Source: Aplysia californica (Eukaryota). Taken from it: DNA of 62,971 nt. The stretch spans positions 436,822-499,792 of the forward strand of contig NW_004797741.1 in assembly GCF_000002075.1 (NCBI RefSeq). The letters run 5' to 3'. The position numbers were made by a program, and so were the translations under genes. Numbering within the stretch: the first letter of the stretch is position 1; each line of letters starts with the position of its first letter. Positions 7,685 to 62,971 of this stretch are shown here, one piece after another. The notes under the pieces are model-generated. The model did not search any database and was not told the DNA's origin. It saw only the letters and a program-made list of their open reading frames with translations.

Positions 7685-8638
7685 ATGTCAGGTCAACAAC
7701 TTCGACTGCGGGTACAGACCAAACTAGGACCCAAGATGTTGGATGGTTTATATCTAGCCTCAACTGTAGGCAAGTTGAAAGAAACTATTTCAGCAGCTGC
7801 CGACATACCACCACATAGAATAAGATTAAGACAAGGTTACCCTCCAAAGATTATCGATATAAGCAATGACACTGCTGAGTTGTCAACATTACCGTTTCGC
7901 TCTGGTGACACTATCATAGTTGAGGAGGATGAGTCTCATTCCCAGGGCATGGTCCCAGAGACCAGTTCCTCCTCATCGGACGATCGTCTCGACACTCTGC
8001 TCCACCATCAGTTGGAGGAAGGAGCATCTGGAATACTCACCCGACGTGTTGTGCCAGCAGACAATTCCTGCTTATTCACAAGTACTCACTTGGTCATGAG
8101 TGAGGGTGCTTTGGACTCCAGCGAGGCGAGCCACCTAAGGGAGGTTATCGCCGGCATCGTCTCAAAAGATCCAGTTACTTATTCAGAAGCTTTTCTAGGG
8201 AAACCAAACAAGGAGTATTGCAAATGGATTCGGGACAAGAATTCTTGGGGAGGAGGAATAGAACTGTCTGTCTTATGTCAATTTTACTCTACAGAGATTG
8301 CTGTAGTGGACACTCAGAGCGGGAGAGTGGACAGGTTCGGAGAGGACAAGAATTACAAAGAGCGAGTTTTCCTCATCTACGATGGAATCCACTACGACCC
8401 TCTGGTGTATGAAGCCGTAGACCAATCTGGGGGAGTTTGCACAAAATTCTCCATACACAATGCTGTCATCTTGGCTCAGGCTCTAGAATTAGCCTCCGAA
8501 GCAAAGTCAGTACGCCAGTTCACTGATGTGGAGGGGTTTTCTTTGAGGTGCCTAGTATGCCAGACGCCTCTGCGAGGACGGAAAGAAGCCACTGATCATG
8601 CCCAGGCCATGGGGCATCTCAACTTCGGTGAATATTGA
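7685..8638 (+). CDS. YOD1: Ubiquitin thioesterase OTU1/YOD1, 317 aa, CDS without introns
   Basis: First ATG is at 7685 (aaaATG). The protein has an N-terminal ubiquitin/UBX-like domain (LRLRVQTK...GYPPK...GDTIIVEE), an OTU domain with catalytic motifs PADNSCLF, WGGGIEL and YDGIHYDPL, and a C-terminal C2H2 finger (CLVC...HAQAMGH, NFGEY). The ORF track start at 7652 is a non-ATG extension. Confidence 0.96.
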   Translation: MSGQQLRLRVQTKLGPKMLDGLYLASTVGKLKETISAAADIPPHRIRLRQGYPPKIIDISNDTAELSTLPFRSGDTIIVEEDESHSQGMVPETSSSSSDDRLDTLLHHQLEEGASGILTRRVVPADNSCLFTSTHLVMSEGALDSSEASHLREVIAGIVSKDPVTYSEAFLGKPNKEYCKWIRDKNSWGGGIELSVLCQFYSTEIAVVDTQSGRVDRFGEDKNYKERVFLIYDGIHYDPLVYEAVDQSGGVCTKFSIHNAVILAQALELASEAKSVRQFTDVEGFSLRCLVCQTPLRGRKEATDHAQAMGHLNFGEY

Positions 8639-10167: not shown

Positions 10168-10560
10168 TCAGGAAGAAACATCCTTGCAGTTCGGACACAT
10201 CCACTGATGCTCCGTTGCTCTCTCCAAAATGCCGCTGAGGGTCTTTCTACTGATTGTGCCAGTGCATATCTGGTTGAACGTTCTTCTGTTCTTTCCTGCA
10301 AGGATGCCAGATTTTCTACTTCCTTTCTGAAAACCCAAACCCATCATCCACTCCACAGCAGTACTGGCCTCTGCCTCCTTATCTTCCTTTTCAGTCAGGT
10401 GGTGAGAGAGACATTCAAGGATCTCGACCTTGTCTGGTTGAAATGTGCTGTCTACTGAGGTGGTCTCACCAGCCAGTCTGTCGGCTTTTTCATTTCCTTT
10501 AACACCTGCATGGCCAGGGCAGAAATGTGTCGATTGCCTGTGAATGTTACATCTTTCTAT
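10168..10560 (-). mobile_element. LINE 3' fragment (RNase H C-terminus + Cys motif; I/ingi/Nimb-group-like)
   Basis: PGHAGVKGNEKADRLA is the RNase H motif; a terminal CPNC follows. Confidence 0.75.
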
Positions 10561-11122
10561 TGTTAGCTCTATAGCTGAAAGGTCTTCTAAAAATTGTATC
10601 AAAGTAACAAGGACCTGAAAAAGTAATAGTCTCCTCTACTTATTAATATAATAAGAATAAGATCCCTCTCCATTCAATTCAGGAGAGAAATCAGAATGTC
10701 CTGAATACAGTCAAATCTGTTCATTGTGCCCCATCTTGTAATGACAACCCTGTCTACAGCTGCTGATATCCCTGTACTCCACGCAAAAAAAAAACACCCA
10801 GGTTATTTTGACCCCCACCCCCTTTTTTGGGGGGGGGGTCTATATTAATTTTTTTTTTTTTTTTTTTTTATTAATATCTTACAAAATTCACATTCCTCTG
10901 TTCAATGCCACTGGACCAGATTTTTTCAAACTCGTTGCTGGCAGTTAAGAGGTTTAACCACATGTACTTCAGCAGTGTCCTCTCTTAATTGCAAGTTTAG
11001 TTTTTATTTGAATTTATAATTTAAAACAAATCTTTTCCAGGATATCATTTTTTTTTTCTCCAACTTTAAGATTGTCAGTCAAAAAGGCACATATGATTGT
11101 AAACGGTTTATTGTTTGTGAGT

Positions 11123-31500: not shown

Positions 31501-34500
31501 AAGGTAGGAAGAACATTACGTTATATAAACACACACAAAAATGGAAAATCAACACATTGGAACAATAACGAGAAAAAAATTAATTAACACACCAACAAAA
31601 TAAAACACAACAAAGAGGGAAACATGAAAGAGAAACAGCAATATAAATACAGTAGTCTCCGCTTAAGATCCCGGTGCTCGGGAGCAAAGAAATGCGGGAT
31701 CTTAGGCGAACCGGGATCTTAACCGACGAACCCAGGAAAGAATCTATGGTGACCCATGTTAATGCTCACAATCGGTAAAATGGTCTCCCTCCACTCTAAA
31801 ATGAACTGACGTGACCCCTTGGTGGGTTTATGGCATATGGCGAGCGAAGAGTGGTTAACCTTGATGACCTATCAAAGTGCATAGTGGGATGAGGCGTGCC
31901 ATTTTCACTTATTATCCTATTATGAGTCTCAAGATCTACGCTTATCCAGTTGCCCATCCCCTTTATCTGCTGAAAATTTATAGCTTTCCATCTCTGACCG
32001 TGCCCCCCCCCCCACCCCCCCAACCACCTTTTTCGTTACACCCCATTACGTTGTGAACACACCAATCAAAATTCAGTCTGTCTCGCAAATTCGGGAGTAG
32101 AGACAACGGCTGCAATGGTCAAGGAAGAGTTCACGGTTCGATGTGATCCTGCCTGGAGGGAATGTGTAGGCCCTACCCTCCCAACAAGTGATGTAAGTTT
32201 AGGGGGAAAGCTCAGGCATGAGTGCGATTCGTGGGGAAAACAAACGTGTTGGTCAGTTCACACCCCAGTGTGATTCCGTCTGGGGCAAACATTGTATCGC
32301 TTCATCGAGTTTTACAACGTGTATGTGATCACATTCACGATAGTGGCTGATCTTTGGCGGGAAAGACAGTTTATTGATCTAAACTTTTCACTCTTGGCTG
32401 TCCCGCCCGGGTTTTTGTTCCGCAAATTATGATCTGAAATGCGGGATCTTAGCCGAATGTAGACCTTCAAAGTGAATCAGAGAGGGATCTTAGGAGTGAC
32501 TTTTGTATAGCAAAAATTATGTTTTCTTAAAACAGCGGGATCTTAAGCGAACAGGGATCTTAAGCGGTGGAATCTTAGGCAGAGACCACTGTAGTATGTA
32601 ATGTAGCCTATTTATATTCTTCACAAGAAAATTACAAATCAACGTTGTGTTAACAAGTGAGAAAGAGACGAAGTGAAGCGAAAGTGAAAATAAACTTTCT
32701 TTCTAAAAGTAAAGAGATTTGGTTGGGGGGTTTTTTCACGAATATTATTCCCAGTTTTCGCTGCTGTTGTTTTTAAATTTTTTTTTCTTTCTGGCGGTGA
32801 TATATTTGTAGGAAAAATGCAAAAATCGCGGCCGCGATTCGCGGGTACAAACGCTGATGCTAGTTTAACCCACAAGTAACAAGCTGGAAGAGAGTCAGTC
32901 AGTGAGCTATGCTTCATTTTACAAGAAGCAACTAATTACTTATTATGACTTCAAAAAAAAAAAACAGCTAGGAAAACGAATGTAAGGCTAGCTCTGTCAG
33001 TAAGGAACAATAGACAAGCACACTCACATAGTTCGTGCACTGCCGGAGTCTACACTTCTGGCGCAATTTGTTGATGCCTCCAAACTTTCTCATGTCCTGC
33101 AAGAAATGGGGAAAACAGGAAAGCAATGATAGTATCATCCAGCTCTTTCAAGAAATTATTTCTTATTGGATTAAAACCATTAAAGTGAAAACAAGGAAAG
33201 AGTCCAAAGGTGCCATAATTAAAACTTCGAAACTTGAAAGTAAAAACTGTAGTTTTGAGAAATCACTCAGGATAATATTAATAGAGCCAACAGCTGGTCC
33301 GTTTTCATGATGTTTTTTCCTCAAAAAGAACCTGTAAGTGTTTCCAGTTGAAACAAATGCATTTAACACCTTGCAGTCACACAATCAGCAGTACAAAACA
33401 CCCCATCTGGTCACCCAGCCAGGAGACCGACTGCAGGGGACTTCTCGGGCCTGGCGCAGAAGTGCGCCAGGTAACTGGAACGCATAATTTTCACCAGCGC
33501 ATTATTGCACCAAGTAACTGCAAAGTGTTAATTAGGTTCATTTTTCTGCCCAATGAATTTTTAAAAAATGAAACAACAAAAACAAAAACTTGTCACACTA
33601 AAACATAAGTAATAAAATATTTTCACTAAACAAATGAAGGAGCTCTTGGGCTTAAAAAAACATCTAAAAAAAAATTTAATTAATGGCAAGCAAAAGACAA
33701 CTATCCATAAGTATCTCTATTCGCGTACTTACCTTACAGAAATCACATCTGCCACAGTCCTCGTTCCTGTGACAAGCACTGCATTCACCACATCGTCGGG
33801 TCGTCCGACTTTTTGCCATCTGTAAAAGTGACATTGGAAGAAAGAATACACATGTCATTTTTCTTTTACTACAAAAGGCATTTTAAGGGCATCAACTCAA
33901 AACTTATTTTTAGTAAAAGCATACTGCTCTCAAACAAAGAGATAAGAAAAACCAAGCAACACAAAGATACTCTTTAAACAGCAAAAAATACTTTTCCAAC
34001 TTGGGGCAAATATATGCTGAAATAGCATTTTCAAGAAAAGTTAAGAATCTTGGCATCTATTTTGATTCCAGTTTGTCAATGTCGGCTAAGGTAAATCATC
34101 TGATCAGCTGCATGTATTTAGAAATAAGAAAAATTAATAAAATATGTCATCTGATCAATACTACATATACTGCTTTACAAGTTTTATCAAGACTTGATTA
34201 TTGTAACTCCTTGTTAGCAGGAATATCACTGGAGAAAGTTAGCAGACTTCAAACAGTCCAAAACAATGTAGCACGCTTAGTTTTATGGAAAAGAAAACGA
34301 GACTCTGCTACACCTCTTTTACAGACATTGCATTGGCTTCCTGTTGAGAAAAGAGCTGAGTACAAGTTGGCCAACCTATATCACAAATGTTTGAATGATA
34401 ATGCGCCATCATATTTATTAAGACTGTACATTCCAACTCCCAGTTTAAGGTCATCAGCTGACAAAAAGAAATTTCTTTAACCATCTATGAAACTTTAAAC

Positions 34501-48900: not shown

Positions 48901-49635
48901 CTCATTTTTCTGCAAAGTTGACACTATCACATCAGATAAAAGAAAAAAAGTTCACATTAAGAGGTAGCTGGCCCTTTGCGCACATACAGCATTATCACAT
49001 GCATGGTATTATCACAAGACACACATACATCTATACAGCATAAGGGCAATACAGAAAAACAGATTCAAACTCGAGATCACAAAGACTTTTTGTTTCATCC
49101 CTTGAAGTCTTGAGTTCAGCTCATTAAGTCACCCACACATGATTGTCATGAAGAAATAAAAAACACAGTGACAGAATTAAGACAAACTGTGATGGTGAAA
49201 CGTCCTCTCCAGTGTCCAACACAAGAACCTCAAGAACAAAAAATAAAACATAAAATCGATTGTGGGAAAAATATAGGAGTGATAGTACTCCCACTTGTTG
49301 ACTCTCAAATGAAGTGCAAGGAAAAGCCATCAAACACTGCTGACAGGATGAAAACGGCAAAAAATGAGATTGGTACTGAAGTCCAAGTCCTTCACCCGTT
49401 GTCCTCTCAGCTTTCACACTACAGCTGCCCAGGTTGGTTATCATTTACCACATGTCATGGACAATACGTAGGTCACCACCATGTGGAGTTTTGCTCAAAA
49501 CAGTTTTCACAATCTGTTGTTGCCTCTTTTTATGTATAAAATCTTTAAAATCATGAAGAACTGTGCGCAGGAGGGTGAGTAGTCAGTGTCTTGGGTCTCC
49601 CTCACTCAGCACTTCCCATGAGCAGGTGAGGGAGT

Positions 49636-49714
49636 CTAAGACATCTCAAATGCATTGCCCCACAACAAGATTTTCAGCTTGGGTTTGGAGGAGGTCACTA
49701 TCCTCAGTCTGTAT
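49636..49714 (-). CDS. Probable terminal exon of CARD-LRR gene (YRLRIVTSSKPKLKILLWGNAFEMS*)
   Basis: Strong ttttctttcctcag acceptor and an LRR-cap-like LKILLWGN before TAG. It needs an unseen phase 0->2 exon. Confidence 0.55.
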
Positions 49715-51873
49715 CTGAGGAAAGAAAACATTTTCAGGATAGAGATATTAAACGATATGGGGTGAACATCAACAAATACAATCACTCATTAACAATGGGG
49801 AAACAAAATTTTTGTCAGAAGGAAAACTATTGTTCTAACTATGCCTGAACTGAGAGTAAAACTGAGTGTTTTCCAGTTGGAAACAGAGGCAGCAAATACT
49901 AATTTGGGACCAGCCATGTGCAAGAGTTCAATTAACACAAGCCTTATCAAACAACTCCATAACTCTGTTCCATGCAATATCGTGTCAGTCGTCTTGCAAT
50001 AAAACTTACCATTTTTGTCCTCATCATCATCGTTATTTCTACTATTACCAAAAAGCTGGACTTAATACAAGCAGAAACAAATCCACACGTTTTTTTTGGT
50101 GGTCCAACCAACAAATAATCTTGAGTAAACATTAATTCTAAAGAGATCTAGAGATATTCAGCAAAAATGCTATTATTATTGACCATGGACGTAAAAGAAC
50201 AGATACACATTTAAGAACAAGAGGAGGTCTGAAATAGAGGTCCATGAAGTGGTTATTACATTACAGACTTACTAAGTCATGGAAATTGGGGAACAGTACT
50301 GAACAATGTTATGTTTGTCAAAGGTTTCTGAACAAAACAAGAATTTTTCTAACAACAAATGTTCAATTAAAACACAATATAGTTAAAACAGTATGCCAAT
50401 CCTCCTCCTCCCCCTCCTAACCCNNNNNNNNNNNNNNNNNNNNNNNNNNNNNNNNNNNNNNNNNNNNNNNNNNNNNNNNNNNNNNNNNNNNNNNNNNNNN
50501 NNNNNNNNNNNNNNNNNNNNNNNNNNNNNNNNNNNNNNNNNNNNNNNNNNNNNNNNNNNNNNNNNNNNNNNNNNNNNNNNNNNNNNNNNNNNNNNNNNNN
50601 NNNNNNNNNNNNNNNNNNNNNNNNNNNNNNNNNNNNNNNNNNNNNNNNNNNNNNNNNNNNNNNNNNNNNNNNNNNNNNNNNNNNNNNNNNNNNNNNNNNN
50701 NNNNNNNNNNNNNNNNNNNNNNNNNNNNNNNNNNNNNNNNNNNNNNNNNNNNNNNNNNNNNNNNNNNNNNNNNNNNNNNNNNNNNNNNNNNNNNNNNNNN
50801 NNNNNNNNNNNNNNNNNNNNNNNNNNNNNNNNNNNNNNNNNNNNNNNNNNNNNNNNNNNNNNNNNNNNNNNNNNNNNNNNNNNNNNNNNNNNNNNNNNNN
50901 NNNNNNNNNNNNNNNNNNNNNNNNNNNNNNNNNNNNNNNNNNNNNNNNNNNNNNNNNNNNNNNNNNNNNNNNNNNNNNNNNNNNNNNNNNNNNNNNNNNN
51001 NNNNNNNNNNNNNNNNNNNNNNNNNTATATATATATATTAAGTAGAGGTTGTTCGGCACTCGCAACTGCATAAGGGCATATGAGCACCAAGGGGTGGATG
51101 TCAACAGAGAAGTCTTTACAGGGAATCAGGCTTACTCTGCTCACCTCTCAAGCTTCAACAGCACAAAGTCTGTTTCGACTTTCAAGGCACCCCGGAAATA
51201 CCGAGTCACAAGAGTGTGACAAACATACAAAAGAAGCAGAGGGAAAATGACAATAGTAAGGATTAGGAAAGAAAAAGCAGCAGTTCCCTGTTGTAGATCA
51301 GGCACAGTTATGAGCGTGACATTGATGAATCGTGCCCATTTACAATTCTACCGTGCATGAACGAGAAATGTCCCCCCCCCCCTTTGGGAGTGGCCTAGAG
51401 ACACTTCAGTCAGTGGCACCGCCCCTGGGGGTTTTAATGAACTCAAAACTAACTTGCCTTGTTAATGTACTTAACAACAGTTTATTTTTGGCCGGTGCTA
51501 CTCGCCCGATGTTGGGTGACTAGCGCCAGGCTACTCGCCCGATGTCGGGTGACTGAGGCTACTTGCCCGATGTCGAGTGACAAGCGCCAGGCTACAGGCC
51601 CTATGTCGGGTGACTATAGCGCCAGGCTACTCGCCCGATCTAGGGTGGCTAGCGTCAGAAATGCAGCGCCGTGATGTTATTAAAGATTGTCTAACTACTG
51701 TTTCAATTCAATTGCCCTATCTCATGTCTGAACGAGACTTGGGCGCTAGATCTACCTCGTCTTCTTAGCGCGTGACACGAGTGTGTAAACAAACGTTCTA
51801 GCACTGAGTTGAAAGCAAAAAATTTTGTCTTCGGGGAGAGAGAGAAAGAGAGAGGAGGAGGAGGGGGGGGGAG

Positions 51874-51931
<58 letters not shown>

Positions 51932-54900
51932 CTGCAATCTGCGATTGCAAACGTTCACGTGAAAAGTGGCAAAATTTTGAAATTGTTTCACTTAGGTCTT
52001 TAAGACTTTGGAAAGTTTTTTCCCACATATAATTCAGCTGCCATGTTGACTGATCCGACTCTTGACTTGGAGGACAAGAGGTGACCGACTGAGTGATTGA
52101 TCACGCGAATTTTAAAGGAGCATGCGCAGAAATCCCCACGGGCCAGAACTCGGAACATGCGCAGAAATCCCAAGGGCCAGAAGCCGCAGGCCAGGCGGGG
52201 CTAATCGACCGAATTTGTTCGCCCGGAACATGCACCGAAATCCTAGATCGGGCGAGTAGCCTGATGCTAGTCACCCGACATCGGGCGAGTAGCCACTCCG
52301 TTTATTTGTAAAGCAGTTCAATTTTTACATTATTTTCCCTTTATCTATTTATTTTCTGTAATTATTCCCCCAAACAGCCCCGAAGCTGATAGAAACAGTA
52401 ACAAAGTCATGAACGCATTGTATTCATGCTCTAACTACATACACACTGCTTCTAACGCATAGGCAGAGGAAAACAGTAAGAGTTAGTTGAAGGGCACAAC
52501 ATCGAACCCAATTTGTCTGAAAAGACTCAAACAACATAAATACTGCAATAATTAGTAGGAGAGAACACATTAAAACATCCACCAACCACTCACAAAACAG
52601 AGCAACATGAACAAACCTGCAAAGAGGAGGTCCTCTCTAAGGCAGGAGCCAGCTTGCAGATGCCCGAGTCCAACAACAAGTTGGTGCTCAGATCAAGCTG
52701 GCGTAACTTTTTGGCGTGTGTGATGAGCTCGGCCAGACTGTCACAGGCTCCACTGGTCAGGCCACAGTTCTCGACACACAGCTCGCTGCAGCTGGACTCA
52801 GGGAGGAACTTCACCAGCGCCTGGGGAAAATTTCAAATTTGTTTTCAGATTACTCATTTGTTGTTGATTTAAATACAATTGACATACATATTCCCTGTAT
52901 AAAGGAGTCCAAAGAAGGCCATGTGAAAACTGGAGAAGAGTCACATGGAATGATATACAGAAAAGTGGAAAGACATGGAATAATGTCAAAAAGTGAACCT
53001 AGAGGATAAGGAAAAATGGAAAGTGCAATTGTCGGAGGCCTGAGCCCTGATCCAGGGTGAGAAATGTTATGATGATGGAGAGGAAGTCAAAGAGACAAGC
53101 AAAAGAGCACAGCAGAGACCGCTGATTTCTCCAAAAGCAGGACACATTTATTAAACTGTTCAAGTCTGCTATATCAGGTCGGGAAGTCGGGATAGTCACA
53201 GAGTCAGGGCACACCTGTCAAACACAGCATCGGATTTGCTTCATCTTGACTGAATCCGGAAGTTAAAACCAGCCAGCTATGATCTGCAATGAGTGCAGAA
53301 TCTATGTCACTAACCGGGGCACCAAGGTTCAAAAGGTAAAACACAAAACCTCTCCAGTGACTGTAATTATAGCTCCAAGAGCAACATCCGTAAGTCTCGG
53401 CTGCAACTGTAGGGGATTCGAAAAATTTCACAGATGCTCTGGTACATGAACATTTCAACCAACTGATTGGGGGGCGGGGGTGGGGGAGGGGGAGGGGCGG
53501 CTCGATGTGCTGTGGTTCAGGCATTACACCCCTCTCCCCCTCCAGAATAAGTTTTGGCCTAATTTTACCAAGAGGTCACCCTCCAATTGGTTGTTTGTAG
53601 ATTTTATTTAAATTTGATTATGACGCATTAAAAAAAAACTAACACATTTGATTTTAGATGATCATATCATCGATGTGCAATAAGCTGCATCAACTTAGAC
53701 AACTCTTTTATGTCGCCACCATCCGGCAGACCATGCAGAAGTGGAATAGCTTAAAAATTAAGAGTACACTGCTCGGAGTTGAGGGGAGAAGACTAAAAGC
53801 AAAAAAAGAATCGACAGTTTAAATGTGATTATAAAAAGTCAATAAACCAGTACGAAATCCTTTCCAATTTCAGTTACAAACATCATATATTATTTAGTCA
53901 ACACAATAACAAGACGAAAGATTNNNNNNNNNNNNNNNNNNNNNNNNNNNNNNNNNNNNNNNNNNNNNNNNNNNNNNNNNNNNNNNNNNNNNNNNNNNNN
54001 NNNNNNNNNNNNNNNNNNNNNNNTGCTGCTGCTGCTGCTGCTGTTGGTGTTGTTGCTAATACTGCTGCTGTTGTTTACGTTGTTGTTGTTATTGTTTGTA
54101 GGGAAAGGCTGAACTTTGGTTTGCAAGTTGATTCTTTTAAAAATCCGTTTGCTTTTTATAGCGGGTTAAACTTTGTTGATTTTATTTCCTTTTTTTAATT
54201 TCTGGTCTAGGTTTTGATGTAGACTTTAGAATATTTGACACGCCTTATGGTGAAGCCTTTTCCCAAAGCTGTTCGGTAGCCTGTTAAAAAAAACAACAAA
54301 AAAACAAAGAAAACAACCGCAAACATACACACAAAAACAAAGAAAAACCCATCTCCCCCTTTTCCCCAAATCCACACAATAACCCTCTAAAAATGGCAAC
54401 AAATCTAACAGACTTGGAGAAGTATATTTCCTATGTCGTTGAGGACCTCCTCAGCAATAATATTATTTTTACAGTCATCACAAAAATAAGATGGAAGAAT
54501 GGAACCCCTCACCTTTCCAAATCCAACCCAAACAATAGATAAATCCTTCAAAAATGGCAAATACGAACCGACTTGCAGAAGCATATTTCCCTTATTGTTG
54601 AGGAGGACTATCTCCGCAATTAATAATAATATTATGAAAACTGTTATGATCCTTCATTTCATTTGTTGCTCTGAAAGCCCGTTGTAACCGCAACAACAGT
54701 AACACCCCCCTCCCCAATCCTCAATTCCCCTTTCCACTTTTCAACACAATGTTTCCCGATAAAAAAAATGTAAAAAACGACTTTGCCCTACCTGCATGCC
54801 TTCATTGCCGATGGTGTTCCTACTGAGGTCCAAGACACAGAGGCTTCTGTTCCTCGCCAGACCCTCTGACAGCGCATAGCATCCCGGCGCCGTGATGTTG

Positions 54901-55764
54901 TTGTTCCTCAGCCTGAGCTTCTGCAGGCTGGAGTTGGACCTCAGCATATCTCGCAGGTGGGAGCAGCTCTCGTCGCTAATCTCCAGGAAGCTCAGGTCAA
55001 GGTCGACCAGAGTCCGGTTGGCGGCTACGGCTGAGGTGATTGTCTTGATGGCTGCCAGGTCGAGGCTGGTGGAAGAGAGATTCAGGTTGCGTAGGGATTT
55101 CGTATTCTGAAGAAGCTCGGACAGCGAGTCCGCCCCGACCTGGTCCACGACGTTCAGACGCAAGTCCAAAGAGTGCACAGTGCTGTTCTCCTGAAGCGCC
55201 TTCGCCACCACGCTTATGTCCACCCCCGAGAGCTGCGTCTTGCCAAGGTGCAGCTGACTGATGCAGTTGTGAGACTTGACCATCTGAGCCAGCGCCTCGG
55301 CCCTTCGTCCGGAGAGGTCGTGACCCGTGACGCACACACTCATCATCACCAGACCCGGGTACGCCCCCGGTTCGCCGTTGCGACACGAGTCGGAGTCTCC
55401 CTCCAGTAAGGAGTAGGCCGATGCCCGGGAGGACGCTTTGCTGAGCCTCTTGTCCCCACTGGCCCGCACACGCTCCAGCTCCACCAGAGGCTTGAGGGAA
55501 AGGTCAGGGGCCAGGTAGCCCACGTCAAAGGTCACGTTCTTCTCCTCCTCCAGCACAGAGCTCTCGCTGGCGCTGCACTGCACCTCGTTGATGATGCGGT
55601 CCATCTCCCGCATCACCTGGAGGACCTGGAGCAAGCAACACACTCAATATGAGCTGATTGTTTTCGTTTGACTTTAGTAAGAGTTTTACAGCGCTTGCGA
55701 CACAAAGACGTCATAATGTAAGTGTTGAAGAAAAAGTAGATAATATTATTGGTTTGATGCTTCA

Positions 55765-55848
<84 letters not shown>

Positions 55849-56412
55849 TCACATTCTCTCTTTCACACATGTCTGTGCACATAACAATAATGATGCAGTT
55901 GGATGCTTGCACTCACAAACAGGCTCAGAGTCACATGCATAATAGATTCTATATAAATGACAACAATAGTTAAAATTAATAGTCTTAAGCTGGATACGTA
56001 ATCAGTATTCTGATTGTGACCCAATGGTATTCTGATTGTATGCTTTAAAGGTCATAGGAATTCTTATATTACAAGATGGTATTACTAGTAAGTAACAGAA
56101 AGGAAACGAGGAGAGATAATGATGATAGATGTTTGATAGGAAAGAAGGAGCGAATAACAGAAGAGCACCCATCAACCAGGGTTGGTGATTTTTTATATTT
56201 TTTTCATAAAAATAAAAAAAATCGATTTTTTAAATTTAAATCATGATTTTTTAAATTTAAATCAGATTTTTTGATTTTTTTGATTTTTTAAAAAATGTCG
56301 ACACAGTTTGGGATTTTTGGCTACTAAAAGTATGTTCTTTTAGTGCAAAATGCATTGTCTTTATTTTAACTAATGATTAAATTAAGCAACCTCAAAAGAA
56401 AGCCTTAATCTG

Positions 56413-56471
<59 letters not shown>

Positions 56472-59022
56472 TGAATTATGGCTACAGACAAAAAATGAAG
56501 AAAATGTCAGTCTAAAAGGAAGGGGGGGGGGGTAATTATGCATAGATAAACTTGCATTTTATTACAGTGTGTGTGTGTGTGTGTGTGCATGCGCTTGTGT
56601 TTGTGTAAAAAGAAAAAGAAAATGTTAATTTCAATAATGAAAAAAAAGTAAATTGAATGCTGTATTATTTTACAGTGACAGGGGGGAAAGCAGACTTTTA
56701 AGCATGATTTTATTAGTCTACTAAACCTTATATGTTTTATAAAACCAAGGAAAGGAATTCTGAATATTTAAAGATGTAAAAACAGAATACATTTTTTAAA
56801 AGTGATTTAAATCACTGGGTTAATTGAATATTGTATTATTTTACAGTGACAAGGGGGAAAGCAAAATTTTAAGCATGATTATATTAGTGTACTAAACCTT
56901 ATATGTTTAATAAAACCAAGGAAAGGAACTCTGAATGTTCAAATATGTAAAAACTGAATACATTTGTTAAAAAGTGATTTAAATCACTGATTAAAAAAAA
57001 AAAATCAAGTTGATTGAAATATACAAAAAATCAACTGATTTAAATCAACCCAGCTCTGATTTCAATTATGGAAAAAAAAGTAAATTGAATACTGTATTAT
57101 TTTACAGTGAAAGGTGGGAAAGAAGACTTTTAAACATGATTATATTAGTCTACTTAACCTTATATCTGTTTTATGAAACCAAGGAAGGGAATTCTGAATG
57201 TTGAAATATGTAAAAACTGAATAAAAATGTAAAAAATTTTTAAGTGATTTAAATCACTGATATTTATCCAAAAAATCAAGTTGATTTAAATCAAAAAAAT
57301 CAACTGATTTAAATCAACCCAACCCTGCCATCAACCACCCTCACTTGTTGTTTGTTTTCGTTTGGATAAAGAAAAGCACAATAATGGTCATTTAGTGCTG
57401 GGAAAAAGCAAGATGGACAGACAGAAACAATAGAGCAAAAAGAAAAGAAGCAGGATGCTCCAGTGGCTCCCTCCATTCACCCACAATCTGAACTGAGAAA
57501 TGGTAATCAGGAGGTGCTACACGATAGATAAAGGGCAGTTGTGGATGAGATGAGAGAATAAAAGATTGAGAAAAGATAAGAACACAAACACAATAAAAAA
57601 GAAAGACTGACAGACTGATCAAGGTAAAAGTGGGAACGAAAAGAAATGGCCGTCTAACAAGTAGGGTCTGAAACATCACAGCCACAAGAACAGCATGGAA
57701 TTACCTCTAGGATCTCAGTGGAAGCTCCAGAAGTCGCTAGCACATCACAGAATGCAGGAATGAGTTCGGGTTCACCATCTCCCATCAAATCTACCAAACC
57801 CTCACACACCGAGCGTCGATCCCGTGTCCCTGCGTACGTCTGGATGTCCACGTCGCTCAACAGACCAGCGTCCTTCAGCCTGCCCAGCATGGGGTAAGGG
57901 TCAAACCGTTGCCGGAGCAACTCCCCGACATTGTTCATGATGTGACGCTGGCGAGTTACCTCCCCTTTCTCGCTGGACCGTCGACGCACTCGGCCGGGTC
58001 TCTTCGCACGCAGCTCTGGCGTCACGATTTTAGGCCTTTGAGCCGAGACTTCGGGCCGCGACGTCGGCTGCTGCGCGGTCGATGGAATGGATGCTGTATT
58101 TTCCTCAACGTCAGCGCCTTGGGCTGAAGACGCTGTCTGTATAGAAGGATCTGTTGCTGCTCTCTGTACAACTGCGGTCAGTGGTTCTTCGTGTCCTTCA
58201 CTGGCGAGGCTATCGTGGTGCAGTCTTTGCTCTCCCGTGCAAGGAGCTTTGCTGACGAGGTTGTTGTTTTCCCCTGCGTTCTTGCTCTCGGCCTCATTCC
58301 CTGAGCTGTCGCCGTGGCCATCCGACTTGGAGGAGTCCGAGGAGAAGGCTTGAATCTGTGCTTTGAGTTCCGCCACTCGCTCACAGTTCATGTAAGTGGC
58401 TTCTTCAGTTTGGTCCTGGTTCGCGTCTGGATGCCTTCCTGAGTTGGTGGATGGGGTACTGGGGAAAACACACAAAGAGGAGGAGAGAATAAAGATGTAT
58501 ATGAGATATTAATTCAAAATGAGAGTAGAAAAAATATCACACAGACGCAGCTACTACGTGGCGTGGAAAATTTAAGTGTCAATATCGTGGCCAACCATAC
58601 TAGCTTACCGTTAGAGGGAGAAGACCATCACATTTTCAGGAATTTAGCTTTTAAAAGGTAAAAAGGACACTCCAAGCAAGGCACGAACAATAAATAAAAA
58701 GCCTCGCTTGGGTGGCTAGTTCATCGTGCCCATCATGCGTCAAATCACATACAACTGCTAAAACCTGTTTTGTTAGTAAGGCAACCAGACAGGAACCAGT
58801 GCTACTTCATCACCAAAACGAAACCTTCTATTACCCCCAGTCTTTCCAAACTAAAGAACAACGTCCAAGCGCCAAAAAACGTTGCTTAAAACACATTAAA
58901 AATAGATAAGATAAAAATTAACTTAACTTTGCCTTCAACTTAGGAAGAGCCTTTATTGCGTATTCCCTGTCAAATTTGGACAAACAGGACATAACTTTAT
59001 TTAAGAGAGAGGTTAAAATGGG

Positions 59023-59075
<53 letters not shown>

Positions 59076-59285
59076 GAACTGCATGCTTCCAACTTCCCCA
59101 AATTTTGAACTTTCGACGACGTTAGGCATTTCTTACCGGAACAAAAACAGCCTAGGGGGTTTGGGTGGCGGCACGGCGCCGCTGGTAAACCTGGGTGCCG
59201 GCGGCGGGTTCTCCACCACATCGGGCAGCGCGCTGGACAAGGGTGTGTAGTGCCTGGAGTCCTCTCTGCCCGTGTCGCCATCACC
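49636..59285 (-). CDS. CARD-like + ribonuclease-inhibitor-type LRR protein (NLR-like, no NACHT); partial model
   Basis: In-frame GT-AG exons at 59137-59285, 57705-58458, 54792-55625 and 52617-52820, with a probable terminal exon at 49636-49714. One exon is probably hidden in the gap at 50424-51025, and the 5' end is uncertain. Confidence 0.85.
50424..51025. other. Assembly gap (others: 43814-43988, 46402-46548, 53924-54023, 59462-59561)
   Basis: Runs of N. Confidence 1.
51045..51430 (-). repeat. Retroposon copy homologous to 29503-29890
   Basis: Shared blocks such as gggaatcaggcttactctgctcacctctc and acttcagtcagtggcac. Confidence 0.7.
51490..52300. mobile_element. MULE-like MITE with subterminal tandem repeats
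   Basis: GGCTACTCGCCCGATGTCGGGTGACTA occurs ~5 times at the left end and inverted twice at the right end; 9-bp flanks TTTATTTTT / TTTATTTGT. Confidence 0.75.
52617..52820 (-). CDS. CARD-LRR gene exon: two further LRRs
   Basis: ALVKFLPESSCSELCVENCGLTSGAC...LRQLDLSTNLLLDSGICKLAPALERTSSLQ; phase 0/0. Confidence 0.9.
54792..55625 (-). CDS. CARD-LRR gene exon: linker + six to seven RI-type LRRs
   Basis: LxxLxLxxNxI repeats at 28-aa spacing: ISQLHLGKTQL, VHSLDLRLNVV, LRNLNLSSTSL, LVDLDLSFLEI, LQKLRLRNNNI, LCVLDLSRNTI. 834 nt, phase 0/0. Confidence 0.93.
55766..55846. repeat. (AC)n microsatellite
   Basis: Direct reading. Confidence 0.95.
56177..57327. mobile_element. hAT MITE with an internal triplicated segment
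   Basis: CAGGGTTGG ... CCAACCCTG TIRs, a perfect 8-bp TSD CCATCAAC, GATTTAAATC repeats, and three ~170-240-bp internal copies (56640-57320). Confidence 0.88.
56414..56468. repeat. (TA)n microsatellite inside the hAT MITE
   Basis: Direct reading. Confidence 0.95.
57705..58458 (-). CDS. CARD-LRR gene exon: disordered region + CARD-like death fold
   Basis: Lies within ORF 57654-58475. The C-terminal ~80 aa (HIMNNVGELLRQRFDPYPMLGRLKDAGLLSDVD...LVDLMGDGEPELIPAFCDVLATSG) follow the CARD six-helix hydrophobic pattern. Confidence 0.85.
59137..59285 (-). CDS. CARD-LRR gene exon (Pro-rich)
   Basis: GDGDTGREDSRHYTPLSSALPDVVENPPPAPRFTSGAVPPPKPPRLFLF; ctag acceptor and GTAAGA donor; phase 2 joins the next exon in frame. 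Confidence 0.8.
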
Positions 59286-61910
59286 CTAGGAGGAGCACAA
59301 GAAGGAAGAGAATACATTAAGACAAGAGATTACATGTACACATATTGATCTCATTTTATGTGTTACTAAGGGTATACATGATATTATATCTCTTTCTCCT
59401 TCATTACTTCCATTACAAATGCCCTCCCCCCACCCCCGCCCCCCGCAGTCCCTTTCCTAAGNNNNNNNNNNNNNNNNNNNNNNNNNNNNNNNNNNNNNNN
59501 NNNNNNNNNNNNNNNNNNNNNNNNNNNNNNNNNNNNNNNNNNNNNNNNNNNNNNNNNNNNNAATATATATATATAATATACATACGATTATATACATACT
59601 TGCATACATTCTAGATTACATCTCGCGCGTGTCTGCTGGGTGGCCGAACGCGAATGTATATAATCTTAGCCTCTGTTTACGGCTCTGATAACCACCTCTT
59701 TTGTCATCATGGAGCTTAGACGATCGCATGTATGTGTTTATTTTTGTCTTTAGCTTCTGTGCTTGATTTGGCGAATTCTGTTTGTAGTTTTATGTTACTC
59801 CCTTATGCTTGGCCGAACCCCCTTGGCCTTTCTCCTCTTATGCCTATATGCCCTGGCGCTTGCTGCAGGTTGTAAAAGGCGTTTTTATGAGGGAACGTAC
59901 AGCTGCAGCGGTTTATGGTGTCAGCAAATGCGCCATGTCGGCTGGACGCTTGCCATAGAGGTTTCCATCCTCCTATTGGTTTATGCATGTTGTAGTCTAC
60001 AAGTTCGTTCGGTTTTCCTTCCTGTCTGTTGTTTTCGTCTCTCTGTCCCCCTTTTCAAGTTTTACCCACTTACTATCTTTACTCACTCACTCACACGTTT
60101 GCACACATACACGTGCATGTGCAGTCTCATCCTCTCGCTCTCTTTTACGCACACGTTCTGTCTCTGTCTGTCTGTCTCTCTCCCTCTCTTTCATAAAAAA
60201 AAAAAATGACACCCACACATCCACGCCCACACACATACACACTCCCGTGCTGGCACAGTGAACACTGACGTTTTTTTTCCTCTTTAAATGATGGTACTTC
60301 TAAAAGAAATTGTCTTGAACATGCCAGGTCTGACACTAAATCCAATAAATGGTTACCCAGAAGTACCTGGTTTATCACCCCGACGTCCCTGGTTTATCAC
60401 CCCGACCCCCCTCTTTATCACCCATTCTTTCTCTTTTGCCATTTCCACCGAGTGATAATTATTTCTCTCTTATATGTATACCCTAAGCGACGGAAACAGT
60501 GCGCCGATCGAGTGCAAAAGCAAAGTTCGACAAGGAAGTAACTTCAGATTCTAAACTCTTTCAAGCCCAATGCCCAATTTGTCTGCAAAAGTCTATAACC
60601 AGGACCCAGGTCTGAAAAAGGGAAAAATGGGGGGGGGGCACACCCAGTACATATACGCATAATAGCAAGAATGGCATACTCCATATTCTAGTCTTCTTTA
60701 ACTTTTTTAATTTACCGGGCTTAGTGACTTCAAAATCCCCAAACAGCATTGGTGTTAAGTGGGGCGGCGAGTTTGGATCTTATCAAATCCATCACTACCA
60801 ACATTCGAGGGCCACATTTACGTGCTACAAAAAAAAATTACTTCGAGCATCTAGAACAATCGACAACACTGACGTCACTCTTCTGAGTAGAGAGACGAAC
60901 TGCTCGCTCAGCTGGTTCCAGCCTTTCAATGTTTCCGTAAAGCAGTAACGTTCTGAGCAAATGAGGATAAGTAAAACTTGCATCTCTATGTTATGGATCT
61001 ATACAAGCCTCTTTACCGCCTACTTGATTCAAAACACTCCACAGGACTTTAAAAAAAGAAACTACACGGAAGTATGTTAACCTTTGAATATTGTGACTGG
61101 CGTTGGATTGACCTGGAGGGGGGGGGGGGGGGGGGGGGGGGGTTACCGTAACATGAGTGGGTACACTCGCGTGGACGGCGGAAATACCAACCAATCAATA
61201 TAATTATAGAAACAGACGCAAACACACACGTACATGGGGGAGGGGGGCGGGGGACTTAGGATTTGGTTTTTCCAAGTATTTTCTGACACAACATAAAGGT
61301 TGCTGTCAACCAAATACAATGGACATGGGGAAGGACAGTGAGTATTTTGTGGTGTTTTTTGGGTGTTGTTTTTCGTTTGTTTGGTTTCTTAAATTATCTT
61401 TTAAATTGCTTTTTAAACGATCCCTTACTTAACATACACATTGCAGCCAACCACATTCATAAGGGGGCTCGAAGTCTGTTGGGATTTTAAAACAATTTTC
61501 TCACACAATATAAACGTTGCTGCAAACCAAACAATATAATACTTGGGGGTGGGAGTGTTTTGGGATTTTTAAACAATTCTCTTTCACACAATAAAATTTG
61601 CAGACAAACGAATAGTATTTAAAATATATCTGAGCTTGCTGACAGGAAAAGGGAAAGACGAAATAAGGAGTAAGCTAATACGGTTTTGCTTTAAAAAGAT
61701 GAAGTGCACCAACTTAAAGAGGAAAAGCTGCCGGTAGCGAAATTTTGTGGAGAAGTGCTAAGCACTTTGTCACTTGAAGAGTCATGAGACTGAGACTACA
61801 AGGGAAGAGACTCTAGGAAGGAAAAAGAATCTTTGAATCGAACATCATGCTTGGATTTCCACAAGTTGGCCAAAAGTTCTGAACCAAAAGTGTCTCAGTC
61901 TTCAGCTTAC

Positions 61911-61955
61911 CAAACATTTGTCACAGAACCATGAATACCAACTATAGTAACGCCT
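61911..61955 (-). CDS. Candidate upstream 45-nt exon of CARD-LRR gene (RRYYSWYSWFCDKCL)
   Basis: tttgttcag acceptor and GTAAGC donor; open in the phase needed to join exon 59137-59285. Confidence 0.4.
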
Positions 61956-62971
61956 CTGAACAAATATATAATATGTATATGTACATATAAATATATATAA
62001 TTGACAAGGAGAGGCAACGTTCTCGGATTCACGCTAACCAACACAAAGAAAACGACGTTGCAGCGAAGATATTTTATAATACATGTATATAAGATGCACC
62101 CAAAGAGACAACCAAAGATGACACACCACAGTGCAGAATATCGACCTTTTCCTAACACTCACTGCAACCGACATTTTCTGACACGCCGCAATGGCCTCCC
62201 ACATACGCCCTCATTAACAAGAGATACAATGAAGACTAATACAGAACAAGCAATATTGTCTGTCGTGCCAGAACAGTGCCTATCAGAATATAAGGGCAAT
62301 GACTTTGAGTTGACCTTATTCAGGGCAGTTTGACCGCTATTGTCACCTCTGCCCCATTTCTCTGGCTTCTACGGAGAAAAAAACCCTGTCAGACATCACG
62401 CTAAACACACACTTAGTAAGGCTGCTCCTTGTGAATGCGAGATTCTCAGGTTTCCCGAACTGCCCTAGCTGCCGTCGCTTGAGCCGTCAATTTCTGAGAC
62501 CTAGATTAATCAGTCTTTCCCGTGACAAAGACAAGGGAGGCCAAAACCGTGCGAGATCAGATAGCAAAGGAAACTACGAGGAGGCTGACTCAAACAAAAG
62601 ACAAATAAATATGTCAAACGTGAGAAATCATGGCATGGAGAAAGGAGACTATCTGACTCGGACCCGGAGCGGGGCACCAACTTCCATAGTCACGCTTGTC
62701 ACAGAAACAAACCCACAAAAAGAACAACGACAGAATCGAGTAACGAGAGCCGCGTTACTGTTTGGCTTGTACTAAACTGTTCCTTCAGCATCGCAGCAGC
62801 TACGCCTAGAGGCGGGGAGCTTCTCACTATAAGTACAGCTCCGACATTGCAAAGCAAATAGACAGGGATATGGAAGCGAATCATAGATCAAGAATAAGTA
62901 CAAGAACAATACACTGGACATTTATTTCACCCTTTGTCGCCCATATAGCAGTACGGTAAGACATATAATAT

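What the first reader, a model, noticed from the sequence alone, without database searches (positions are those of the whole stretch)
49636..61955. NLR-like protein joining a CARD-like domain directly to RI-type LRRs with no NACHT/NB-ARC
Seen: in-frame exons give a disordered region, then a CARD-like fold (~57950-57730), a ~100-aa linker, and at least 8 LRRs of 28 aa. The only intron between CARD and LRR (55626-57704) is gap-free and filled by a hAT MITE and microsatellites, with no Walker A-containing ORF. Known: NOD1/NOD2/NLRC-type receptors need a central NACHT ATPase between the death fold and the LRRs. Inference: this could be an ATPase-free sensor/adaptor, or a decoy regulator of invertebrate CARD/caspase signalling. 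I do not recognise the architecture as a named family.
Basis: partly seen in the sequence, partly recalled or inferred. Interest (0 to 1): 0.75.

Follow-up and report, generated by a model that had tools for sequence, protein, structure and literature searches.

The report
Mollusc CARD–LRR protein without an ATPase
This is a real, expressed sea-hare gene whose protein joins a death-fold (CARD) signalling domain directly to leucine-rich repeats with no ATPase engine between them, and it belongs to an unstudied family kept in snails, bivalves, cephalopods and chitons.

Summary
On the minus strand, exon 58458-57705 is spliced in frame to exon 55625-54792. Transcript contigs from two runs of two studies skip exactly the 2079-base, gap-free intron.

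The first exon ends in a divergent CARD. Pfam misses it in this species. A model built with 32 aligned sequences (pLDDT 83) matches solved CARDs at Z 12.4-7.4. In a search of 48,161 chains, 35 of the top 37 rows are CARD proteins and death domains rank below them.

The second exon carries a 93-residue linker and ribonuclease-inhibitor-type LRRs of 28 residues. Nine LRRs are encoded in the window and 11 in the RefSeq model.

No Walker A occurs in 0 of 31 family proteins, or on the coding strand of 49000-62971.

The gene is already modelled as an uncharacterised RefSeq protein of 871 residues. Relatives of 36-58% identity were found only in molluscs. I found no paper on the family.

The LRR is the best conserved domain, and the gene is single-copy. 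I therefore favour a membrane-tethered CARD adaptor over a fast-evolving pathogen sensor. Function is inferred, not shown.

The 5' exons and one LRR exon are not in the window.

The parts
59137..59285 (-). Coding exon for aa 148-197 of the RefSeq model. It is disordered and ends in the family-invariant PPKPPR motif followed by LFLFR.
   Evidence: tblastn gives 100% identity. The X1 and X8 contig pieces cover 59137-59285 and join to 58458. Borders are AG/GT. Invariant columns are P187-R192.
57705..58458 (-). Coding exon for aa 197/198-448: a disordered stretch of about 160 residues, then the CARD.
   Evidence: An exhaustive HMMER search with this exon found 13 relatives.
57705..57953 (-). Divergent CARD (aa 366-448). 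Helix 6 probably runs on into the next exon.
   Evidence: AF2 with alignment gives pLDDT 83.3. VIA-align gives Z 12.4-7.4 to solved CARDs; 35 of the top 37 rows among 48,161 chains are CARD proteins. Pfam CARD hits 10 of 20 orthologue segments, but not this one.
55626..57704 (-). Intron between the CARD exon and the LRR exon. It is gap-free and filled with microsatellites and a 154-nt unit in three copies. It has no NTPase coding capacity.
   Evidence: The joint skips 2079 bases in X1 and X8. Open stretches are at most 102 aa, with no Walker A on the minus strand.
55347..55625 (-). Conserved linker (aa 449-541). It holds no known domain and a serine-rich stretch.
   Evidence: Pfam gave no family here in 6 full-length members. 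The best Atlas feature score is 0.83, to LRR clusters only. Mean pairwise identity is 42%.
54792..55346 (-). Ribonuclease-inhibitor-type LRRs: the units that start at aa 542, 570, 598, 626, 654 and 682, and the first part of the unit at 710.
   Evidence: Pfam LRR_6 E 3e-13. PDB phmmer gives LRRC34 at 2.9e-26 and ribonuclease inhibitor at 2.8e-23.
52617..52820 (-). LRR exon (aa 727-794): the end of unit 710, units 737 and 765, and the first two residues of unit 793.
   Evidence: tblastn gives 100% identity. The X1 loose end beside 54791 equals 52790-52819. Borders are AG/GT.
50424..51025 (.). Assembly gap. It lies where the exon for aa 795-844 (the last two LRR units) would be expected. I did not fill it.
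   Evidence: These residues have no match in the window or in the two flanking pieces I fetched at E<=1, and none was listed in the assembly at E<=0.001. That the exon sits in this gap is inference.
49636..49714 (-). Last coding exon: the family's most conserved tail (..YRLRIVTSSKPKLKILLWGNAFEMS) and the stop codon.
   Evidence: tblastn. The acceptor is read from the sequence only. Tail identity across the family is 80%.

Best explanation
SHOWN.
- This is a single-copy, spliced, transcribed gene. An identical RefSeq model exists: 871 aa, 'uncharacterized protein LOC101861307'.
- Its protein has, in order: a long disordered N-terminal half with conserved WKFWRRLS and PPKPPR motifs, a divergent CARD, a 93-residue conserved linker, 11 ribonuclease-inhibitor-type LRRs, and a highly conserved C-terminal tail.
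- It has no NACHT, NB-ARC or any P-loop.
- It belongs to one orthologous family that I found only in molluscs: gastropods, bivalves, cephalopods and a chiton.

INFERRED (about 0.4-0.5).
- It works as an ATPase-independent adaptor tethered to a membrane.
- The MGxxLSC start of the RefSeq model and of 6 other family members suggests N-myristoylation plus palmitoylation.
- The strongly conserved LRR would bind a conserved, probably endogenous, partner, or hold the CARD in check.
- The CARD would recruit another CARD protein by homotypic contact, for example an initiator caspase or one of the orphan CARD proteins of this genome.
- Clustering at the membrane, or partner binding, would replace the oligomerisation that a NACHT provides in NOD1, NOD2 and NLRC4.
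For: Splicing and expression. The joints 55625/57705 and 58458/59137 occur in one contig each of X1 and X8, which come from different studies. Exon B words are held by 18 runs from 7 studies. Splice sites are canonical.

Single copy. The CARD segment has one genomic match. Other LRR matches in the genome reach only 26-29% identity.

CARD.
- Model pLDDT is 83.3.
- Z is 12.4-7.4 to CARDs, against 6.9-5.7 for death domains and at most 3.4 for unrelated folds.
- Pfam CARD hits 10 of 20 orthologue segments, best E 1.1e-6.
- A profile search against PDB sequences gave 12 hits: 8 natural CARD proteins, 3 designed proteins (two of them titled as computational designs, one on the Apaf-1 CARD template 1cy5), and 1 unrelated.
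- Atlas features point to CARD clusters at 0.89.

No NTPase. Walker A occurs in 0 of 31 proteins and not on the coding strand. No NACHT hit appears at E<=0.1 in 7 scanned proteins.

Family..

Conservation. Mean pairwise identity is LRR 54.5%, tail 80%, CARD 44%, disordered part 27%. The MGxxLSC start occurs in 7 of 31 models.

Possible partners. The genome holds at least 6 other CARD-coding loci. The Aplysia immunome paper names orphan CARD proteins in passages I read.
Against: - No binding, localisation or functional data exist.
- This species' own CARD gets no Pfam or PDB sequence hit. Foldseek E-values are weak (0.1-5). Z values near 12 are within the range the tool warns can occur for helical bundles.
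- The acylation signal sits in exons that are not in the window. It is seen in only 7 of 31 models; the others start differently, as isoforms or incomplete models.
- Two raw poly(A) RNA runs show zero depth on the exons, so expression is not general.
- The best LRR matches include axonemal LRR proteins (LRRC34, DRC5), which could point to a non-immune role.
Confidence: 0.5

Rival explanations
1. Decoy or brake. The protein sequesters CARD partners, as CARD-only proteins such as ICEBERG do, or caps CARD filaments. The LRR and the membrane anchor keep the complex inactive.
For: There is no oligomerising ATPase. The CARD fold is close to many filament-forming CARDs and to ICEBERG (Z 9.1). The gene is single-copy and conserved.
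Against: A simple decoy would not need 11 strongly conserved LRRs, a conserved tail and conserved N-terminal motifs. No data bear on activation or inhibition.
Confidence: 0.2
2. Direct microbial sensor. The LRR recognises a pathogen molecule and the CARD signals, standing in for the very small NLR set of molluscs.
For: The domain order is CARD then LRR, as in NOD1 and NOD2. Passages of PMC9334734 report only one NACHT-LRR protein in this species. LRR similarity to NLRP5 and NLRP14 is E 1e-18 to 1e-19.
Against: The LRR is the most conserved large region, at 54.5% mean identity and never below 40% across molluscan classes. The gene is single-copy with no expansion. Both are unlike typical arms-race receptors, though a conserved microbial ligand remains possible.
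Confidence: 0.15
3. Non-immune scaffold. The protein is a membrane or cytoskeleton-associated LRR protein in which the CARD is only a protein-protein module with no tie to cell death or immunity.
For: The best LRR hits are LRRC34, DRC5 and ribonuclease inhibitor. The family shows housekeeping-like conservation and a one-to-one pattern. RRLS, PPKPPR and (in gastropods) PxYxN look like kinase and SH3/SH2 docking sites. That reading of the motifs is recalled knowledge and was not tested.
Against: CARDs with solved structures are almost all in death or innate-immunity pathways. No localisation data exist.
Confidence: 0.13
4. Artefact. Two genes are fused by mis-modelling, or a NACHT exon is hidden in a gap or lost by mis-assembly.
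For: The locus has three assembly gaps. The 5' exons map best to other contigs.
Against: The intron between CARD and LRR has no N and is skipped exactly in contigs of two runs. The same architecture without Walker A occurs in 31 of 31 proteins from many species. The X8 contig has only 438 nt upstream of the 59285 exon, too little for a NACHT.
Confidence: 0.02

Closest known systems
NLRC-type NOD-like receptors (NOD1, NOD2, NLRC4)
   Same: N-terminal CARD and C-terminal ribonuclease-inhibitor-type LRRs in the same order. The CARD model aligns to NOD1 CARD at Z 10.5-10.8 and to NLRC4 CARD at Z 10.0-10.1.
   Different: There is no NACHT or Walker A at all. There is a long disordered N-terminal half with a likely acylation signal. 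The gene is single-copy with a conserved LRR. By definition it is not an NLR.
Apaf-1 / CED-4 / Dark CARDs and MAVS / RIG-I CARDs
   Same: These are the best structural matches: MDA5-MAVS entry Z 12.4; Apaf-1 CARD Z 12.1, rmsd 1.7, 85 residues. Apaf-1 CARD is also the best natural sequence-profile hit (E 0.31). Like MAVS (recalled), the protein combines a CARD, a proline motif and a membrane anchor.
   Different: Sequence identity is 9-17%. These rows are tied within about 1 Z, so no subfamily can be assigned. The anchor would be an N-terminal lipid, not a C-terminal helix. Bivalves have this family as well as MAVS.
PIDD1 (LRDD)
   Same: A death-fold domain and LRRs in one protein without an NTPase (recalled knowledge).
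   Different: PIDD1 has N-terminal LRRs of another type, ZU5 and UPA domains, and a death domain rather than a CARD. No such Pfam hits appear here.
LRR-only ribonuclease-inhibitor-like proteins (RNH1, LRRC34, LRRC74A)
   Same: 28-residue LRR_6 units. These are the best sequence matches of the LRR exon and of the linker-LRR start.
   Different: They lack a CARD and the N-terminal motifs.

Membership tests
CARD (death-fold superfamily, CARD subfamily) | Six-helix antiparallel bundle of about 85-90 residues | tested here: met
   AF2 with 32 aligned sequences gives pLDDT 83.3 and six helices. Apaf-1 CARD aligns over 85 of 91 residues at rmsd 1.7, Z 12.1.
CARD (death-fold superfamily, CARD subfamily) | Closer to CARDs than to death, death-effector or pyrin domains | tested here: met
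   Search of 48,161 chains. Rows 1-37 have Z 12.4-7.4; 35 are named CARD proteins, one is a designed protein and one is unnamed. Rows 38-50 are death domains plus full-length ASC, at Z 6.9-5.7.
CARD (death-fold superfamily, CARD subfamily) | Match to Pfam PF00619 at the curated cut-off | tested here: not met
   The window's own sequence has no hit at E<=1 and is not among the 6 genomic hits. Orthologue segments: 10 of 20 hit at E<=1, best 1.1e-6. Membership therefore rests on fold plus family-level sequence signal.
CARD (death-fold superfamily, CARD subfamily) | Homotypic CARD-CARD binding or filament formation | not testable with these tools
   Needs pull-down or polymerisation assays.
NOD-like receptors (NLR) | Central NACHT/NB-ARC NTPase with Walker A | tested here: not met
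   [AG]xxxxGK[ST] occurs in 0 of 31 family proteins and not on the minus strand of 49000-62971. No NACHT appears at E<=0.1 in 7 proteins. The transcript joins CARD to LRR directly.
NOD-like receptors (NLR) | C-terminal ribonuclease-inhibitor-type LRRs | tested here: met
   LRR_6 E 3e-13. Eleven 28-residue units. NLRP5 and NLRP14 match at E 1e-18 to 1e-19.
Ribonuclease-inhibitor-like LRR proteins (Pfam LRR_6) | Tandem 28/29-residue LRRs matching LRR_6 | tested here: met
Unnamed molluscan CARD-LRR orthologue group | Collinear WKFWRRLS, PPKPPR, CARD, linker, LRRs and the ..RIVTSSxPKLKILLWGN tail | tested here: met
   The RefSeq model, identical to the window's exons, aligns end to end at 35-58% identity with 25 members. 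The window itself encodes PPKPPR, the CARD, the linker, 9 LRRs and the tail. The WKFWRRLS exon is not in the window.
PIDD1-like death-fold LRR proteins | ZU5 and UPA domains and a C-terminal death domain | tested here: not met
   No such Pfam families at E<=0.1. The fold is a CARD, not a death domain.
Dually acylated (myristoyl plus palmitoyl) membrane proteins | N-terminal Met-Gly-x-x-x-Ser/Thr with a nearby Cys, and lipid attachment | tested here: inconclusive
   MGSHLSC begins the RefSeq model, and MGxxLSC begins 7 of 31 models. That exon is not in the window. Reading the motif as an acylation signal is recalled knowledge. Lipidation itself is not testable here.

The most novel reading that the evidence does not exclude
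Molluscs, which have very few NLRs, keep an ancient phylum-wide signalling platform that needs no NTPase. It would be a lipid-anchored CARD-LRR receptor that seeds CARD filaments at a membrane when its LRR is engaged. That would be a third way to build a death-fold signalosome, beside NLR/Apaf-1 wheels and MAVS-type tail-anchored filaments.
Probability: 0.15. Interest if true: 0.8.

Novelty: new variant of a known kind. Interest (0 to 1): 0.5.

Why it matters
CARD signalling is normally started by an oligomerising engine (NACHT, NB-ARC or a helicase) or by a membrane-anchored adaptor.

Here a CARD is wired straight to NLR-like LRRs, and the family has been kept as a single gene across molluscan classes. 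Either the LRR alone can control a CARD, or membrane clustering replaces the ATPase.

It also gives a concrete candidate for intracellular CARD signalling in animals whose NLR, MAVS and RIPK sets are reduced, according to passages of PMC9334734 and PMC11103948. Domain-based immune surveys miss it because they require a NACHT.

If it turns out to be a housekeeping scaffold, it is simply one more lineage-specific domain combination.

Tried and rejected
Single-sequence searches for the CARD found nothing. Pfam gave no CARD at E<=1 and PDB phmmer gave 0 hits at E<=10. The single-sequence AF2 model was weak, at pLDDT 65.8. I did not take these as refutation, because the alignment-based tests were positive.

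Foldseek E-values never reached 0.001. I relied instead on VIA-align Z values and on the clean ranking of CARD proteins.

NACHT hidden in the intron or in a gap: rejected.

Two separate genes: rejected.

The spliced contigs could be DNA of a retrocopy. This is unlikely. The runs' 'RNA?' label is only a guess, but the genome holds just the intron-bearing copy.

PIDD-like reading: rejected.

A cryptic domain in the linker: Pfam found nothing, Atlas features reached only 0.83, and structural TM stayed below 0.4.

The PxYxN motif is not family-wide. It occurs in 15 of 26 aligned proteins, all gastropod-like rows.

Relatives outside molluscs: none named. I ran an exhaustive HMMER search with the CARD exon (13 hits), a profile search and a chiton CARD-plus-linker search (5 hits). 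The last two are limited to shared words and to a length window. Several hits are unnamed, so absence elsewhere is not shown.

Literature. 'CARD-LRR', 'LOC101861307', 'CgNLRC4' and six orthologue LOC numbers each gave 0 papers. Passages read with the find mode in PMC9334734, PMC11508797, PMC11874512, PMC3308963, PMC8260672 and PMC11103948 do not mention this architecture. Supplementary tables were closed. Those of PMC9334734 in particular may list the gene under a CARD category.

Raw poly(A) RNA runs X21 and X22 gave zero depth on the exons, so they say nothing about strand or level of expression.

Each exon was searched on its own. For whole-protein work I used the database protein P0035.


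Full report
WHAT IS THERE

The finding lies on the minus strand of a eukaryotic window. Its two large open stretches are 57654-58475 (273 aa) and 54741-55643 (300 aa).

Reading the DNA and checking the borders gives exons with canonical AG...GT sites:
- 59285-59137
- 58458-57705
- 55625-54792
- 52820-52617
- a terminal coding piece of about 49714-49636, with the stop codon at 49638-49636

The 58458-57705 exon ends on a complete codon and the 55625 exon begins on one. The two therefore read through as ..STEILE|VLQVMREMD...

GAPS FIRST, AS ASKED

The intron between the CARD exon and the LRR exon (55626-57704) contains no N.

Gap 53924-54023 lies in the next intron. The X1 transcript contig continues from 54791/2 into letters identical to 52790-52819. 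No exon of that transcript is hidden there.

Gap 50424-51025 lies between exon 52820-52617 and the last exon. Residues 795-844 of the RefSeq model have no match in the window or in the two 10-kb flanking pieces I fetched at E<=1. None was listed anywhere in the assembly at E<=0.001. That exon probably falls in this gap.

Gap 59462-59561 lies upstream of exon 59285-59137.

Residues 1-147 are not in the window. Their best matches are on two other contigs: C529 at 98% identity for aa 1-102, and C620 at 92% for aa 99-149.

TRANSCRIPT EVIDENCE

Exon B words are held by 18 runs from 7 studies. All are labelled 'RNA?' or '?', which is a guess by the tool.

I laid four runs on 54700-59400. One contig of X1 (5485 nt) and one of X8 (5745 nt), from different studies, cover 54791-55623, 57703-58458 and 59137-59285. 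Their joints skip 2079 bases (CT..AC on the plus strand, cut +2, which is GT..AG on the minus strand at 57704/55626) and 678 bases.

The genome has only the intron-bearing copy. These joined forms are therefore best read as spliced RNA.

The two raw poly(A) RNA runs, X21 and X22, had zero depth on the exons. Their reads fell only on intronic repeats. Expression is therefore not general.

IDENTITY OF THE GENE

An exhaustive HMMER search of 1.84 billion representatives with the CARD-bearing exon found 13 proteins at E<=0.001.

One cluster holds P0035: 871 aa, XP_012941933.1, 'uncharacterized protein LOC101861307 [Aplysia californica]'. It sits on a contig of 642,332 bases, the length of this window's contig. 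P0035 maps to the window's exons at 100% identity. The two long alignments read through into intron at an exon end, which lowers their overall figures to 99.6% and 95.3%. It uses the same CARD|LRR junction.

P0035 served as the spliced protein.

THE CARD

Taken alone, the sequence evidence is thin.
- Pfam gives no CARD hit for this species' segment.
- Its exon is not among the 6 CARD loci that PF00619 finds in the genome.
- PDB phmmer finds nothing.

At family level the signal appears.
- 10 of 20 orthologue CARD segments hit PF00619 at E<=1, best 1.1e-6.
- 2 of 7 full-length proteins hit it weakly, at E 0.007 and 0.019.
- A profile of the 20 segments found 12 PDB sequences at E<=10. Seven are Apaf-1 CARD variants and one is CED-3 (E 0.31-1.5). 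Three are designed proteins (E 0.003-0.11); two of them are titled as computational designs, one on the Apaf-1 CARD template 1cy5. One is an unrelated thymidine kinase.
- Atlas features put the segment nearest to CARD clusters, at 0.89 with 175-182 of 256 shared features. That is a lead only.

The fold test is the strongest.
- With a 32-row alignment, AF2 gives pLDDT 83.3, pTM 0.70 and six helices.
- Foldseek lists almost only CARDs, but at E 0.1-5.
- VIA-align's second look gives Apaf-1 CARD Z 12.1 (rmsd 1.7, 85 aligned) and the MDA5-MAVS entry Z 12.4. Unrelated folds score at most 3.4.
- The Foldseek-independent search of 48,161 chains puts 35 named CARD proteins among its first 37 rows (Z 12.4-7.4). 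Death domains follow at Z 6.9-5.7.

The tool warns that helical bundles can reach such Z values by arrangement alone. What persuades me is the full-domain coverage, the clean ranking and the family-level Pfam signal together. I file the segment as a divergent CARD. I cannot assign a sub-type, because the top rows are tied.

THE REST OF THE PROTEIN

Exon B gives Pfam LRR_6 at E 3e-13. Its best solved relatives are LRRC34 (2.9e-26), ribonuclease inhibitor (2.8e-23), NLRP5 and NLRP14.

Units of 28 residues start at aa 542, 570, 598, 626, 654, 682, 710, 737, 765, 793 and 821 of P0035. That makes 11 units, 9 of them encoded in the window.

The precomputed PF27087 tag on all members is 'LRR_TMOD-LMOD', another LRR model.

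The 93-residue linker has no Pfam family and no convincing Atlas neighbour.

NO NTPASE

[AG]xxxxGK[ST] occurs in 0 of 31 family proteins. It does not occur on the minus strand anywhere in 49000-62971. The one hit there is on the opposite strand.

The intron's longest open minus-strand stretches are 62, 102 and 75 aa. The intron is filled by (AC)n, (AT)n and (GT)n runs and by three copies of a 154-nt unit with palindromic motifs. I did not test whether that unit is a hAT element.

THE FAMILY

Searches with the closest full-length relative, with a 26-sequence profile and with the chiton CARD-plus-linker region returned collinear proteins of about 610-890 aa.

The named species include:
- gastropods: Arion, Lymnaea, Physella, Biomphalaria, Elysia, Haliotis, Littorina, Pomacea, Babylonia, Nucella
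- bivalves: Pinctada, Pecten, Mizuhopecten
- cephalopods: Argonauta, Octopus, Acanthosepion
- a chiton: Liolophura

All are 'uncharacterized' or 'hypothetical', auto-named 'CARD domain-containing protein', or mislabelled NLRP5, NLRC3 or 'LRR and PYD domains-containing 2-like'. Beyond these, only generic LRR proteins scored.

Family-wide features:
- WKFWRRLS, present in 25 of 25 rows that cover it
- an invariant PPKPPR
- the tail ..RIVTSSxPKLKILLWGN

An MGxxLSC start is seen in 7 of 31 models. A PxYxN motif is seen only in gastropod-like rows (15 of 26).

Mean pairwise identity by region:
- tail 80%
- LRR 54.5% (minimum 40%)
- CARD 44%
- linker 42%
- N-terminal part 37%
- disordered middle 27%

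In this genome the gene is single-copy. Other LRR matches reach only 26-29% identity.

HOW IT MOST LIKELY WORKS

Shown: the architecture, the splicing, the absence of a P-loop, and the conservation pattern.

Inferred from established knowledge of CARDs (homotypic recruitment and filament seeding) and from recalled motif rules (Met-Gly-x-x-x-Ser plus Cys for dual acylation, PxxPxR for SH3 binding, RRxS for basophilic kinases): the protein is a membrane-tethered adaptor. Its conserved LRR engages a conserved partner or restrains the CARD. Its CARD recruits another CARD protein without any ATP-driven oligomerisation.

I put this at about 0.5. The rivals are a decoy or brake (0.2), a direct microbial sensor (0.15), a non-immune scaffold (0.13) and an artefact (0.02).

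The conserved LRR and the single-copy state are the main argument against an arms-race sensor. They do not exclude a receptor for a conserved ligand.

COMPARISON WITH THE KNOWN

The protein works like the two ends of a NOD1/NOD2-type receptor, but it fails the defining NACHT test. It is therefore not an NLR. It is not PIDD-like either.

I found no paper that describes the family:
- 0 papers for four identifier or name searches.
- No mention in the passages I read of six papers.

The Aplysia immunome survey, in the passages I read, counts one NACHT-LRR gene (LOC101849611). It required a NACHT, so it would not have listed this gene as an NLR.

VERDICT

The function remains open.

The gene model itself is already public. 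What is new is recognising a phylum-wide, NTPase-free CARD-LRR family with a probable lipid anchor. That is a new variant of a known kind, of moderate interest.

Noticed in passing
outside the window: G000:C529:51309-51614 and G000:C620:369726-369878: The first 147 residues of the RefSeq model are not on this contig's searched part. Their best matches (98% and 92% identity) lie on two other large contigs. A second, partial RefSeq model (P0001, 316 aa, 99% identical) exists on a 562,250-base contig. This suggests assembly fragmentation or a haplotype duplicate of the gene's 5' end.
   Followed up: partly
window 56108-56426: An intronic repeat has very high depth in the RNA-type runs: word depth 3274 and 7502 in X1 and X8 at 56113-56269. 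It also shows a recurrent 'goes back 40' joint at 56147/56108, in 162 reads of X21 and 143 of X22. That indicates a multi-copy, transcribed element with a tandem variant elsewhere in the genome.
   Followed up: no
window 56648-57334: Three copies of a 154-nt unit (90% and 68% identical to the first) lie with palindromic GTGATTTAAATCAC-type motifs between them.
   Followed up: partly
window 7652-8638 (+): A single open frame of 328 aa. I ran no search on it.
   Followed up: no
window 10168-10602 (-) and 34001-34480 (+): Open frames of 144 and 159 aa that look to me like RNase H and reverse-transcriptase tail fragments of retroelements. The label is recalled and not tested.
   Followed up: no
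window 54700-59400: Two raw poly(A) RNA-seq runs of the same species label, about 14.8 million reads each, have no read on any exon of this gene. Contigs of two other runs carry the full transcript. Expression is probably restricted by tissue or state.
   Followed up: no
window 49636 downwards: The X1 contig has about 3.6 kb beyond exon B, but only about 0.44 kb of coding sequence remains. The mRNA should therefore have a 3' UTR of roughly 3 kb extending below 49636. I did not map it.
   Followed up: no
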